In this document: positions 49,660 through 52,386 of the stretch, in pieces | Layout of the letters: each line of letters opens with the position of its first letter | Numbering within the stretch: the first letter of the stretch is position 1 | Assembly: GCA_003693705.1 (NCBI GenBank) | Contig: RBZT01000591.1 | Location: 1-64,000, forward strand | Reading direction: 5' to 3' | Length of the DNA stretch: 64,000 nucleotides | From: Polymyxa betae A26-41 | Lineage: Eukaryota; Protista; Endomyxa: Phytomyxea | The notes under the pieces: model-generated | What the model saw: only the letters and a program-made list of their open reading frames with translations | The model's database searches: none | What the model was told of the DNA's origin: nothing | Position numbers and translations under genes: made by a program

Positions 49660-51668
49660 TCAAAGAAATTGCATAATGGTTGAACAAACAGCATCGATAT
49701 TTTGCTGATAGCCATGTTTTTTTAGAAGCGACAGAACGTCACGGGTGTTTGTAGGTTCGCCCTGCGATTTGAATGTGTCTAAACATTTGGAATCGATTTT
49801 GACATTGACCTCGTTTTGCCAAGAGCACGACCAGTGGTGAATAATAAAAGTATGGTCACTACAAAAATGTTCAATGTCTTCAGAAGACGAAAGAAATCTC
49901 ATCCGATTTGGTAGAGGATAGAGGACGCAGGGCTGCATTATACCAACACGGCCGTTAACCAAATCAAGTTCGTCTACAGCTCCGATGACTCGAGAAATCG
50001 CCCCAGGACCGGTCTAATAACAACATGAATACCATATTGCAAGCATTTTCGGAAGGACGTACAGATTCAAGAATATCGAGTCGATTGCCAAGACACAAAG
50101 CGTTCAAGCACGACAGAACGACAGGGTGCTTTGGAGAAGCAGCGGCAAACGAATTCATAATTTCGACATGACCAGTGCTGCCCAGACCGACAATAACGTT
50201 GAATGGAGCTAACAGATTGTCAAGAGGCGCTACACATTCGATATCCATATCTGCATATACACCACCAAACTGGTATAACAGTTCCCATCTCAAAATATCA
50301 CTACGCTGAACTGGAGTCGTTGCATTCTCGTATAAATCACGGCGAATTAAATGCAAATCCACGACATCTTGATCTCGCCACAGTTTATACTCAAATTTAT
50401 CATTGAGCCTGATAAGCGAATCTGCCCTGATGTATGAAGGAAGTTAGAAGAGTTTTCTTTAAGGAAAAAAATACCATTTGATGAACTTTGGCGGGATATC
50501 TCGGTCTCCAAGCCAGATTTGATGAATGATCGACGGAATCGATTGTCGCCGGTATCCAGGATTGGCTAATTTGTTGTACACGGAAGCGAACTTTTCCAAC
50601 CATTCTTTATCATGCGGACTATAACGATCAAATTTCGTATTCAAAGGTGCCGAAAATGCTTCAGGTAACCAGGACTGCTTCTGGGCCACTCGACAACCAC
50701 TACGACCAGGTTTTCGACGAATCTTGCTCAGAGGATAAGTATAAAGGTCAGTTTCAGAATGAAGTTTGGCAAATATGTCATCCGGATCGGAATGAGGATC
50801 GAAAGCGAACATTTTAAAGCGCTGTAGCGGTTTCTGCCAAGGTTTCGGGCTCGACGAATAATGCAAAATATTAATTGGAACGTTCTTCCAGTAGGCGGGT
50901 GCCGTTCTTGTAAACCATCGCATCGCACGTTGAGCATTGAAGCTAAATGGCAGGCGAGCAGCTGGATGTGAGTTTTGATACCAGTCTGTAAAGATCTGGT
51001 TCAGATAACCGGTATCTCCACCGTCATACCTGAAAATAATGAGCAACAAACTTAAAAGTTGGAGTGATAACCGCTTACGAATCAATATCAGCAGCACGAC
51101 GTAACAGATACGAAAATGTTGATGGACACGGCTAGAAAACAAATCAGCTTACAGCATGTATAACAAGAAAAAAGAATCCAACCTTAAGCAGCATGACGCC
51201 GGCGTTAAAGCAGTCAGGCGGGAAGAAATCAGGAGCAGCTGCAAAATCAACATGAGTCAACCGAGCGAATTCGGCATCGATGTCAAAATCTGGATTAACA
51301 ATAGCACAATCGGCGTCGATGTAAAACACGCGATCATAACCAAATTCATCCAGCTGCCAAATTCGTAATTTGGTAAAACCACATTGAACCCAGGATTGGA
51401 CATGAGATCTGTTTGGATTTCGTATAGGATTTACAACGATGATTTCGTCATAGCCCAGTCGTGCAAGGACCTCCTCATGTTCGACGAGATCCGGTACAAT
51501 CAGCAGCACTAATGCAGCCTGCAGTCGCTTCCGTAATCGCCTGATCGAATGCGATAGAACTGGACATGATAACGGTCAGCACGTCTGAAACGGAATCCTT
51601 ACCAGAGTACCTTTGACGCCTGGTAAGAAGTCCAACGATGTTATGAGACTGACAACAGCATTAGACAT
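49660..51668 (-). CDS. Bifunctional cytosolic glycosyltransferase: GT8 (Gat1-like) fused to GT32 (Glt1-like)
   Basis: GT8 part: VSLITS..FLPGVK, HVQSWVQCGFTKLRIW, YIDAD, FAAAPDFFPPDCFNAGV, SYDGGDTGYLN, FNAQR, HYSSSPKPW. GT32 part: IPSIIHQIWLG, RSDILRWELLYQFGGVYADMD, TGPG, HHWSCSW. The junction lies inside ORF 50459-51142. Confidence 0.88.
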
Positions 51669-52386
51669 GATATAAGTAACACTACACGACTTCCGTAGAG
51701 ATAAAAGACGCAATGATTGCATTTATCAGCCAACCTAGAAGCAATTTGTAGCTCACCAAATGCTACACTTTGCAATGAGCAACATCGCAGTGAACTGACG
51801 AAATCCCCAGAAATTATAGTAGTATCTTGAATTGTGGCTTGAAATGTCTTGTCCATAAAATATCGCTCGGCAAGTTTCGAAGGCCTCGACAACTAGGGAC
51901 TCTCCTGTATTTGATCGTTGTTCTATCGAGGATTTATTATTACTTAGAGATTAACAGCAAATGTAATCCAGTCTTACTCTTAGTTGGTCATAAAATGCAC
52001 ATTTTTTGATATTATGAAACATTTTCACTATTTGCACAGGTTTTGTTTCAGGATTGTCGACCTGAAAGCTACTCAATTAGATTTTTGACAATCGTTGGCA
52101 AAGAACCAAAAGCAAAAGACGTCAAAACATCCGGTGTTAGATTAAAACCCCGATCCGTTGACAGATTGCGAATCACTGACACAGACATGACTTCCAAAAA
52201 TGATCAATTATTGACTTCTTTGTGCTGTCGATGGAATCATTCAACCAGCAAGACGTATTTCAGTGATAAAGTTCAGTCTGCAATTTGGTAATGAAGAACA
52301 TGTTTGGCGCAGCCCCGTTATCACATACAGTAGATGATGCCTAAATCTGCTGTATCGTTCAGATCTTCCAGAACGTCTTTGCAGCG

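What the first reader, a model, noticed from the sequence alone, without database searches (positions are those of the whole stretch)
49660..51668. Gat1-Glt1 fusion: the last two Skp1 hydroxyproline-glycosylation enzymes in one polypeptide
Seen: a GT8 domain and a GT32 domain with no signal peptide or TM segment. The GT8 end (HYSSSPKPW) and GT32 start (IPSIIHQIWLG) share one stop-free frame. Known: in Toxoplasma and Pythium, the O2-sensing PhyA/Gnt1/PgtA pathway builds a pentasaccharide on Skp1. It is completed by Glt1 (GT32 glucosyltransferase) and Gat1 (glycogenin-like GT8 galactosyltransferase), encoded separately there. The motifs HV.SWV..GFTKL, APD.FPPD.FNAGV, SYDGGDTG.LN and FNAQR.M.W match Gat1 as I recall it, rather than glycogenin. 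Inference: this organism has the O2-sensing SCF-regulating pathway with a fused terminal enzyme that could channel substrate. A similar fusion may already be noted in another protist, so the novelty may be lineage-specific.
Basis: partly seen in the sequence, partly recalled or inferred. Interest (0 to 1): 0.85.

Follow-up and report, generated by a model that had tools for sequence, protein, structure and literature searches.

The report
Fused Gat1–Glt1 Skp1 glycosyltransferase gene
This is a real, expressed six-exon gene of the sugar-beet root parasite Polymyxa betae that joins the last two enzymes of the oxygen-sensing Skp1 sugar-chain pathway in one protein. The same fusion is widespread in other protists and is already noted in the literature, so it is a solid annotation and not a discovery.

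Summary
Confirmed. On the minus strand, 51668-49660, six exons and five 48-51 nt GT..AG introns encode 586 aa. The order is a GT8 module, a linker of about 60 aa, then a GT32 module.

- **Junction:** it lies inside one stop-free exon.
- **Expression:** Logan contigs from two independent studies cover the whole gene at 100% identity with the introns removed (all five in one, four in the other). A single mRNA therefore spans both halves.
- **GT8 half:** its best solved match is Pythium Gat1 (6mw5), the Skp1 alpha-galactosyltransferase, ahead of glycogenin.
- **GT32 half:** it is collinear with stand-alone, anchor-less GT32 proteins of oomycetes (Pythium insidiosum, Albugo). A motif upstream of the GT32 core is shared with them.
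- **Not done:** T. gondii Glt1 could not be retrieved, so Glt1 orthology is inferred.
- **Pathway in the genome (P. betae, 1,001 contigs):** two Skp1 genes with the target Pro (DFTPEEE), a PHD-type prolyl hydroxylase, and an anchor-less GT60 (Gnt1-like). No AgtA-type GT77 was found. PgtA was not resolved.

The fusion is not new. At least 22 protein clusters carry GT8 followed by GT32, including the annotated Plasmodiophora brassicae ortholog and a foraminifer. A 2021 review states that odd-even enzyme pairs of this pathway are often fused. Verdict: new member of a known kind, moderate-to-low interest.

The parts
49660..51668 (-). Whole coding region: 6 exons, 1761 nt, 586 codons plus TGA at 49662-49660
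   Evidence: Reading. Exon lengths, phases and stop-free frames. Spliced contigs.
51611..51668 (-). Exon 1 (58 nt), ATG at 51668-51666
   Evidence: The N-terminus aligns with the start of the P. brassicae ortholog P0002.
51560..51610 (-). Intron 1 (51 nt, GT..AG)
   Evidence: Skipped in contigs of runs X2 and X5.
51183..51559 (-). Exon 2 (377 nt): GT8 N-terminal half, with the DAD metal/nucleotide motif at 51317-51309
   Evidence: PDB 6mw5 at 1e-14 against glycogenin-2 at 8e-9. 59% identity to P0002.
51132..51182 (-). Intron 2 (51 nt, weak donor GTTGGA)
   Evidence: Skipped in X2 and X5.
51079..51131 (-). Exon 3 (53 nt)
51030..51078 (-). Intron 3 (49 nt)
   Evidence: Skipped in X2 and X5; the cut is ambiguous by 3 nt.
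50475..51029 (-). Exon 4 (555 nt): GT8 C-terminal part, linker and start of the GT32 module in one open frame
   Evidence: 184 aa without a stop. Residues 1-70 match 6mw5 at 6e-20. Residues 132-183 align to residues 7-69 of the Pythium insidiosum GT32 P0313.
50819..51668 (-). Gat1-like (GT8) module, introns included
   Evidence: The match to PuGat1 ends near HYSSSPKPW plus about 10 aa.
50639..50818 (-). True linker, about 60 aa, poorly conserved
   Evidence: The linker of the P0002 model has low pLDDT. No match to PuGat1 or to P0313 here.
50597..50623 (-). Motif YSPHDKEWL, shared with stand-alone eukaryotic Glt1-like GT32 proteins and with other fusions
   Evidence: Regex survey, alignments. 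Predicted as a confident helix in the P0002 model.
49663..50638 (-). Glt1-like (GT32) module, introns included; DMD motif at 50251-50243
   Evidence: Pfam PF04488 at 5.6e-11. Exon 5 is 41% identical to P0313 at 1e-28. Exon 6 aligns to the P0313 C-terminus. Och1 9n3s is hit by the model's C-domain.
50427..50474 (-). Intron 4 (48 nt), removed in X5 but retained in the X2 contig. If retained, the frame stops 5 codons into the intron.
   Evidence: The same intron was called in GenBank KMS64853.1.
50063..50426 (-). Exon 5 (364 nt): GT32 core
50014..50062 (-). Intron 5 (49 nt)
   Evidence: Skipped in X1, X2 and X5.
49660..50013 (-). Exon 6 (354 nt, stop included): TGPG, YPLPN and HHW..SWQ motifs and the conserved C-terminal tail
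51723..51725 (-). Upstream in-frame ATG, 19 codons before the modelled start, with stops further upstream
   Evidence: It lies inside the transcribed region, because the X5 contig reaches beyond 51750.

Best explanation
A single-copy, expressed gene of Polymyxa betae encodes one cytoplasmic polypeptide of about 586 aa. A Gat1-type GT8 alpha-galactosyltransferase module is at the N-terminus. A Glt1-type GT32 alpha-glucosyltransferase module is at the C-terminus. A linker of about 60 aa, probably disordered, joins them. Shown here: the gene structure, the single spliced mRNA, the family of each half, intact DxD motifs in both halves, and the closer relation of the GT8 half to Pythium Gat1 than to glycogenin. 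Inferred: the GT32 module adds alpha1,3-Glc to the Fuc of the Skp1 Hyp-linked trisaccharide, and the GT8 module then adds the terminal alpha1,3-Gal. This would complete the Toxoplasma/Pythium-type pentasaccharide on the proline of the DFTPEEE motif of Skp1. Tethering would favour consecutive action on the same Skp1 molecule.
For: - Gene model and open frame.
- mRNA: one 1979-nt contig (run X5) with all five introns removed, and one 2779-nt contig (run X2, a different study) with four removed. Both have 0 mismatches.
- GT8 half: the best PDB match is 6mw5, annotated 'UDP-galactose:glucoside-Skp1 alpha-D-galactosyltransferase' (1e-14 and 6e-20). Glycogenin scores lower on exon 2 and is absent on exon 4.
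- Model of the ortholog P0002: the top Foldseek hit is 6mw5 at 39% identity. Glycogenins reach 28-32%, and Och1 (GT32) matches the C-domain.
- GT32 half: Pfam PF04488. It is collinear over the full length of the 309-aa Pythium insidiosum stand-alone GT32. The WS.DD..WL-type motif is shared with Albugo, brown-alga and other anchor-less GT32 proteins and was not matched in 140 other GT32 hits.
- Copy number: the gene is single copy, and the other two GT32 genes of the genome are very distant.
- Pathway context: two Skp1 genes with DFTPEEE. A PHD-type P4H of about 280 aa. A GT60 gene whose product starts 5 aa before the first conserved strand, so it has no anchor. The three long GT77 ORFs are membrane-anchored and have no WD40, so no AgtA was seen; a fourth, fragmentary GT77 hit was not read.
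- Same architecture elsewhere: all long relatives tested carry GT8 then GT32. One is a single intronless ORF on a 77-kb eukaryotic contig.
- Literature: Glt1 and Gat1 functions and their co-distribution. Fusions of odd-even enzyme pairs.
Against: - No direct comparison with T. gondii Glt1 (TGGT1_205060) was possible. Three word-seeded searches did not return it.
- The GT32 tree does not resolve the position of the fused clade relative to stand-alone eukaryotic and bacterial GT32 proteins.
- PgtA, which makes the acceptor trisaccharide, was not identified. Only two stand-alone GT2 candidates were found and no GT74 profile was available.
- Donor and acceptor specificity cannot be read from sequence.
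- The runs that gave the spliced contigs are not labelled RNA in the index, and contigs cannot give transcript ends.
Confidence: 0.8

Rival explanations
1. The protein is a genuine GT8-GT32 fusion but acts on another cytoplasmic acceptor, for example as a glycogenin-like primer of storage glucan or on other nucleocytoplasmic proteins, and not on Skp1.
For: Glycogenins are the next-best structural relatives. JGI pipelines label two fused relatives 'glycogenin glucosyltransferase'. PgtA, needed to build the acceptor, was not found. TgGlt1 was not compared.
Against: PuGat1 outranks glycogenin on both exons, and on exon 4 glycogenin does not score at all. Mandalasi et al. found Skp1 to be the only detectable Gat1 substrate and no role in amylopectin priming. 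Skp1 keeps the target Pro, and PhyA-like and Gnt1-like genes are present.
Confidence: 0.1
2. It is a fusion in which only one module is catalytic. The other would serve as a Skp1-binding or dimerisation module, as proposed for non-enzymatic GAT1-SKP1 binding in Toxoplasma.
For: A 2026 preprint reports tight, non-enzymatic GAT1:SKP1 complexes. The X2 contig retains intron 4, which would give a product with the GT8 module and linker only.
Against: Both DxD motifs (DAD, DMD) are intact, and so are the family-invariant positions of alignments A1 and A2.
Confidence: 0.07
3. It is an artefact: two adjacent genes or overlapping transcripts were merged by assembly, and translation gives two proteins.
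For: The tool warns that a contig across two genes does not prove one transcript. The run kind is unknown.
Against: The junction lies inside one exon with an open frame. No stop, start context or intergenic spacer separates the halves. Depth is uniform. The same architecture exists in at least 22 clusters, including an intronless ORF, the annotated P. brassicae protein and a foraminiferal transcriptome protein.
Confidence: 0.03

Closest known systems
Pythium ultimum Gat1 (PDB 6mw5/6mw8) and Toxoplasma gondii Gat1 (TGGT1_310400)
   Same: Both are cytoplasmic GT8 enzymes. [quoted passage not shown] This is the best solved match for both GT8 exons.
   Different: Here the module is the N-terminal part of a 586-aa two-enzyme protein. 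PuGat1 (266 aa) and TgGat1 (345 aa) are stand-alone. Activity has not been tested here.
Toxoplasma gondii Glt1 (TGGT1_205060, GT32) and the stand-alone Glt1-like GT32 proteins of oomycetes (P. insidiosum PINS_up014282, Albugo laibachii F0W3M3)
   Same: All are anchor-less GT32 proteins with the same start motif (IP..IH.IWLG), the DxD, TGPG and HHW..SW motifs, and the upstream WS.DD..W motif. The alignment is collinear over the whole oomycete protein.
   Different: Here the module is fused behind Gat1. Similarity to TgGlt1 itself was not tested because its sequence could not be retrieved.
Plasmodiophora brassicae 'Glycosyl transferase' (XXQ30064.1 / SPQ93306.1 / UniProt A0A3P3XZC3, 577-580 aa)
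   Same: It is the ortholog, with the same GT8, linker and GT32 order. Identity is 44-59% over exons 2 to 5 and 33% over exon 6, and it is the only strong match in the P. betae genome.
   Different: It is annotated only generically and is not linked to Skp1. The linker sequences differ.
Other fused enzyme pairs of the Skp1 pathway (PgtA GalT/FucT; the Pythium PhyA-Gnt1 fusion)
   Same: Consecutive enzymes of the same pathway sit in one polypeptide. The West laboratory review says odd-even pairs are frequently fused and suggests processive processing.
   Different: This is the fifth/sixth pair. The enzyme that acts later (Gat1) is N-terminal. In P. betae, PhyA and Gnt1 do not appear to be fused, since they lie on different contigs.
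Glycogenin (GYG1/GYG2)
   Same: GT8 fold and DxD motif; these are the next-best structural matches.
   Different: Scores are lower (38.9 against 58 bits on exon 2, none on exon 4). Identity is 28-32% against 39%. There is no glycogen-synthase-binding tail.

Membership tests
Gat1 (GT8 Skp1 alpha3-galactosyltransferase) | GT8 catalytic domain with a DxD motif and a C-terminal His motif | tested here: met
   DAD at 51317-51309 and HYSSSPKPW in exon 4. PDB matches. Pfam PF01501 on the ortholog P0002. The exon pieces alone stay below the Pfam threshold.
Gat1 (GT8 Skp1 alpha3-galactosyltransferase) | Closer to characterised Gat1 than to glycogenin | tested here: met
   Exon 2: 6mw5 at 58 bits against glycogenin-2 at 38.9. 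Exon 4: 6mw5 at 75 bits, with no glycogenin at E<=0.01. Foldseek: 39% against 28-32% identity. No tree with IPUT1 or plant GT8 references was made.
Gat1 (GT8 Skp1 alpha3-galactosyltransferase) | Cytoplasmic: no signal peptide or membrane anchor | tested here: met
   The N-terminus begins with the first GT8 strand. This was judged by eye and not with a predictor. The optional 19-aa extension from the upstream ATG is basic and not hydrophobic.
Gat1 (GT8 Skp1 alpha3-galactosyltransferase) | Transfers alpha1,3-Gal from UDP-Gal to Glc-Fuc-Gal-GlcNAc-Skp1 | not testable with these tools
   Needs an enzyme assay.
Glt1 (GT32 Skp1 alpha3-glucosyltransferase) | GT32 domain with DxD | tested here: met
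   PF04488 at 5.6e-11 on exon 5. DMD at 50251-50243. Och1 (9n3s) is hit by the C-domain of the model.
Glt1 (GT32 Skp1 alpha3-glucosyltransferase) | No N-terminal signal anchor, unlike the Golgi GT32 enzymes Och1 and Sur1 | tested here: met
   The module is internal to a soluble protein. The stand-alone relatives (Albugo, P. insidiosum, eukprot g6507) also lack anchors.
Glt1 (GT32 Skp1 alpha3-glucosyltransferase) | Orthology to T. gondii Glt1 (reciprocal best hit or clade membership) | not tested
   TgGlt1 was not returned by three searches. There is only indirect support, through oomycete stand-alone GT32 proteins and the shared upstream motif. The tree is unresolved.
Glt1 (GT32 Skp1 alpha3-glucosyltransferase) | Transfers alpha1,3-Glc from UDP-Glc to Fuc-Gal-GlcNAc-Skp1 | not testable with these tools
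   Needs an enzyme assay.
Toxoplasma-type Skp1 hydroxyproline glycosylation pathway | Skp1 keeps the target proline | tested here: met
   Both Skp1 genes (contigs C882 and C675) encode DFTPEEE.
Toxoplasma-type Skp1 hydroxyproline glycosylation pathway | PhyA: cytoplasmic PHD-type prolyl 4-hydroxylase | tested here: inconclusive
   The C604 gene (about 280 aa) hits PF13640 at 9e-19. Its PDB matches are PPHD, EGLN1 and 6t8m (a 227-aa 'Prolyl 4-hydroxylase subunit alpha'; from memory, Dictyostelium PhyA), at 2.8e-8. The family is met, but orthology to PhyA is not discriminated from other PHDs.
Toxoplasma-type Skp1 hydroxyproline glycosylation pathway | Gnt1: GT60 without a signal anchor | tested here: met
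   The C846 gene hits PF11397 at 8.8e-54. An upstream exon begins MSSDKIFISIASYRD, with no anchor. The paralog on C469 has a TM anchor.
Toxoplasma-type Skp1 hydroxyproline glycosylation pathway | PgtA: GT2 beta3GalT plus GT74 alpha2FucT | tested here: inconclusive
   Five GT2 loci were found. C351 reads as ALG5-like and C667 as DPM1-like (by eye), and C889 is membrane-bound. C98 (a bacterial-type GT2 of about 300 aa) and C178 are candidates. No two-domain gene was seen and no GT74 profile was available.
Toxoplasma-type Skp1 hydroxyproline glycosylation pathway | Absence of the Dictyostelium-type AgtA (GT77 + WD40) | tested here: met
   Four GT77 loci were found. The three long ORFs have N-terminal TM anchors and no WD40. 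The fourth hit (C455, with stops inside) was not read.
Fused enzyme pair | Both modules on one mRNA and in one frame | tested here: met
   Spliced contigs from two studies. Open frame and phases.

The most novel reading that the evidence does not exclude
The fusion may be more than a passive tether. Retention of intron 4 (seen in the dominant contig of one study) would yield a Gat1-plus-linker isoform without Glt1. That would give the cell a splicing switch between a complete two-step finisher and a Gat1-only Skp1 binder. A JMJD6-like oxygenase fused to Gat1-Glt1 in another protist (P0004) suggests that a second O2-dependent enzyme is physically coupled to Skp1 glycan completion.
Probability: 0.12. 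Interest if true: 0.6.

Novelty: new member of a known kind. Interest (0 to 1): 0.3.

Why it matters
The draft genome of Polymyxa betae, the vector of rhizomania virus, was released as a genome announcement, and I saw no P. betae annotation of this gene. The finding gives it a firm annotation and shows that plasmodiophorids carry the Toxoplasma-type, oxygen-dependent Skp1 modification system. Because the fusion turns up in many clusters, it is a useful marker. It independently links GT32 'Sur1/Och1-like' proteins to Gat1, and so supports the Glt1 assignment in genomes where both are generically annotated. It also points to plasmodiophorid or foraminiferal proteins as natural single-chain reagents for testing whether the last two sugars are added processively. 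It does not open a new question: the pathway, both enzymes and the tendency of pathway pairs to fuse are published.

Tried and rejected
- **Pfam on single exons:** the GT8 pieces gave nothing at E<=0.1, and PF01501 found nothing genome-wide. This is an effect of exon fragmentation, not absence.
- **Attempts to reach T. gondii Glt1:** I tried the P0002 GT32 region, a profile of fused GT32 halves, and a profile of stand-alone eukaryotic GT32 proteins. None returned it.
- **ESM Atlas:** it only confirmed the GT32 family.
- **GT32 tree of 107 rows:** the window's exon 5 pairs with P. brassicae (SH-aLRT 93), but deep nodes are unresolved, so it cannot show Glt1 clade membership.
- **Papers:** Rahman 2017, van der Wel 2019, Mandalasi 2020 (JBC version), West & Blader 2015 and West & Kim 2019 are not held. 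The supplement of the preprint has no mention of fusions.
- **Raw polyA run X11:** 0 reads, so it is no test.
- **PgtA:** the C889 GT2 is a membrane synthase. The C178 ORF has no PDB match. C98 is a stand-alone GT2 followed by a zinc-finger gene.
- **Rejected readings:** the two-gene artefact, and glycogenin identity.
- **Not done by rule:** All searches were exon by exon, and the P. brassicae ortholog P0002 served as the full-length proxy.
Full report
**Organism.** The window is contig C86 of a 27,085,814-base assembly in 1,001 contigs. The Polymyxa betae draft genome is described as 1,001 contigs and 27,085,946 bp (PMC6328671). A 530-bp contig in the sugar-beet RefBeet assembly (GCA_000510975.1) is 100% identical to part of this gene. 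It is annotated as 'hypothetical protein BVRB_042000, partial [Beta vulgaris]' (KMS64853.1). The nearest full-length relative is from Plasmodiophora brassicae. The genome is therefore P. betae (Plasmodiophorida, Rhizaria), and the beet entry is a parasite contaminant.

**Observation and gene model.**
- Reading the minus strand gives six exons: 51668-51611, 51559-51183, 51131-51079, 51029-50475, 50426-50063 and 50013-49660.
- The five introns are 51, 51, 49, 48 and 49 nt long, and all are GT..AG. Intron 2 has a weak GTTGGA donor.
- Exon lengths give matching phases. The split codons read Val, Ser and Trp, and each exon is stop-free in its frame.
- The CDS is 1761 nt (586 codons plus TGA).
- The end of the GT8 module (HYSSSPKPW) and the start of the GT32 module (IPSIIHQIWLG) lie in the same 555-nt exon 4.
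- In-frame stops lie upstream of the start. There is also an in-frame ATG 19 codons upstream (51725). Its extension is not conserved in the P. brassicae ortholog.

**Expression as one mRNA.** Logan contigs of public runs were laid on 49600-51750.
- Run X5 (study P3) has one 1979-nt contig covering the whole stretch. It has 0 mismatches and all five introns are removed at the predicted borders.
- Run X2 (study P2) has one 2779-nt contig with four introns removed and intron 4 retained.
- Run X1 has a 191-nt contig that splices intron 5.
- A raw polyA run had no reads and is no test.
- The index does not label these runs as RNA. However, intron-less contigs that are otherwise identical, with CT..AC borders on the plus strand, can hardly be anything but cDNA.
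- The X5 contig is only slightly longer than the CDS, which fits a monocistronic mRNA of about 2 kb.
- The domain junction lies inside an exon, so one mRNA and one frame carry both modules.
- With intron 4 retained, the frame stops 5 codons into the intron. That would give the GT8 module plus linker only. Whether this is regulated or is assembly or splicing noise is unknown.

**The GT8 half.**
- Exon 2 matches PDB 6mw5, 'UDP-galactose:glucoside-Skp1 alpha-D-galactosyltransferase' of Pythium, at 1e-14 (58 bits). Glycogenin-2 scores 8e-9 (38.9 bits).
- The first 70 residues of exon 4 match 6mw5 at 6e-20, and nothing else at E<=0.01.
- An AlphaFold2 model of the P. brassicae ortholog P0002 was built with an alignment of 14 fused proteins. 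It has pLDDT 73.6 and pTM 0.70.
- Foldseek on that model returns 6mw5 first (39% identity), then glycogenins (28-32%), then Och1 (9n3s, GT32) for the C-domain.
- The DAD motif is intact.
- Mandalasi et al. (bioRxiv 10.1101/764241) show that Gat1 adds the terminal alpha3-Gal to Skp1 and is stand-alone in Toxoplasma (345 aa) and Pythium (266 aa).

**The GT32 half.**
- Exon 5 hits PF04488 at 5.6e-11.
- The three GT32 exon pieces align in order along the whole 309-aa stand-alone GT32 of Pythium insidiosum (P0313). Exon 4 residues 132-183 align to residues 7-69. Exon 5 aligns to 73-174 (41% identity, 1e-28). Exon 6 aligns to 225-300.
- About 30 aa upstream of the GT32 start lies the motif YSPHDKEWL. 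It recurs as WS.DD..WL in other fusions. It also recurs at the very N-terminus of anchor-less stand-alone GT32 proteins of Albugo, brown algae and unnamed eukaryotes.
- A strict pattern for this motif did not match 140 other GT32 hits. The second half of the apparent linker therefore belongs to the Glt1-type module, and the true linker is about 60 aa.
- The model predicts a confident helix at the motif and low confidence for the linker.
- T. gondii Glt1 (TGGT1_205060) was never returned by the word-seeded searches. The GT32 tree is unresolved at depth. Glt1 orthology is therefore an inference. It rests on the oomycete relatives, the shared motif, the lack of an anchor, and the fusion itself to a Gat1 ortholog.
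- The gene is single copy. The other two GT32 loci of the genome (C573, C710) are very distant.

**Pathway context in the genome.**
- Two Skp1 genes both keep the target proline in DFTPEEE.
- A PHD-type prolyl hydroxylase of about 280 aa lies on C604. Its PDB matches include EGLN1 and 6t8m, a 227-aa prolyl 4-hydroxylase that I take from memory to be Dictyostelium PhyA. A second hit on C660 looks OGFOD1-like by eye.
- At least seven GT60 loci exist. The one on C846 has a first exon that begins 5 residues before the conserved IFISIASYRD strand, so it has no anchor, as expected of Gnt1. The C469 paralog has a membrane anchor.
- PhyA-like and Gnt1-like genes are on different contigs, so they are not fused here.
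- The three long GT77 ORFs are membrane-anchored and have no WD40. This argues against a Dictyostelium-type AgtA. A fourth, fragmentary GT77 hit was not read.
- PgtA was not resolved. There are stand-alone GT2 candidates on C98 and C178, but no GT74 probe was available.

**How common the fusion is.**
- A full HMMER scan with exon 4 gave 164 hits.
- Every long hit tested by Pfam has GT8 at the N-terminus and GT32 at the C-terminus.
- A pattern count finds at least 22 cluster representatives with the Gat1 motif upstream of a GT32 start.
- Examples include P. brassicae 'Glycosyl transferase' (577-580 aa, UniProt A0A3P3XZC3) and a protein of the foraminifer Nonionella stella listed in EukProt.
- Another example is an intronless 2052-nt ORF on a 77-kb eukaryotic contig.
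- There is also a 1040-aa protein in which a JMJD6-like JmjC domain precedes Gat1-Glt1 in a single ORF.
- I found no paper naming plasmodiophorids.

**Verdict.** The mechanism is that Glt1 adds Glc, Gat1 then adds Gal, and tethering favours consecutive action on one Skp1. That mechanism is inferred from the characterised stand-alone enzymes. The kind of fusion is already known and is widespread. The new points are the P. betae gene model with transcript support, the redefinition of the linker, and the evidence for the pathway in plasmodiophorids.

Noticed in passing
window 50427-50474 (-): Intron 4 is retained in the only contig of run X2 (depth 31) but spliced in run X5. Retention stops the frame 5 codons into the intron and would give a product with the GT8 module and linker only.
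   Followed up: partly
window 51723-51725 (-): An in-frame ATG lies 19 codons upstream of the modelled start, inside the transcribed region. It would add a basic, Ser/Leu-rich extension that is absent from the P. brassicae ortholog.
   Followed up: partly
L032:753-3875 (+) (protein P0004, Logan contig of ERR14822400): A single 3123-nt ORF encodes a JMJD6-like JmjC domain (PDB 3ld8 at 6e-22) followed by the Gat1 and Glt1 modules. This is notable because a JmjD6-like F-box protein (JcdI) is a known Skp1 interactor (PMC9485057). The organism is unknown.
   Followed up: partly
L018 (G000:C573:1718-4218), minus strand, 462-aa open frame: One open frame carries what looks by eye like the C-terminal part of a UDP-GlcNAc 2-epimerase, followed by a GT32 domain (IPKIIHQVWVG...). 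This is a different GT32 fusion in the same genome.
   Followed up: no
L016 (GenBank AYZY01098499.1, 530 bp): KMS64853.1, annotated as a Beta vulgaris protein, is 100% identical to window 50795-50266 or thereabouts. It is a Polymyxa betae contaminant in the RefBeet assembly.
   Followed up: yes
L012:1948-2394 (-) (G000:C604): The N-terminal exon of the PHD-type prolyl hydroxylase contains LPPELKLLIANQL, which resembles an F-box start. Pfam reported no F-box at E<=0.01.
   Followed up: partly
G000 contigs C469, C846, C32, C729, C667, C698, C708: There are at least seven GT60 (PF11397) loci in a 27-Mb genome. The one on C469 has a clear membrane anchor, which suggests an expanded family of Golgi polypeptide GlcNAc-transferases beside the cytoplasmic Gnt1-like gene.
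   Followed up: partly
L009:1400-1560 (-) (G000:C882): The Skp1 open frame ends ...IRQEFAEFL* instead of the usual ...ENEW... tail. A GT right after IRQE suggests a further intron and a short last exon, as another first-stage note proposed.
   Followed up: no
protein P0099 (628 aa): A Gat1-like GT8 C-terminal part is followed by a major-facilitator transporter domain in one predicted protein. It may be a merged gene model.
   Followed up: no
window 49055-49393 (+): A Cys-rich open frame (CPCC...C..C repeats, zinc-ribbon-like) lies tail-to-tail with the gene. The X2 contig runs 761 nt beyond 49600, so 3' ends of neighbouring transcripts may overlap.
   Followed up: no
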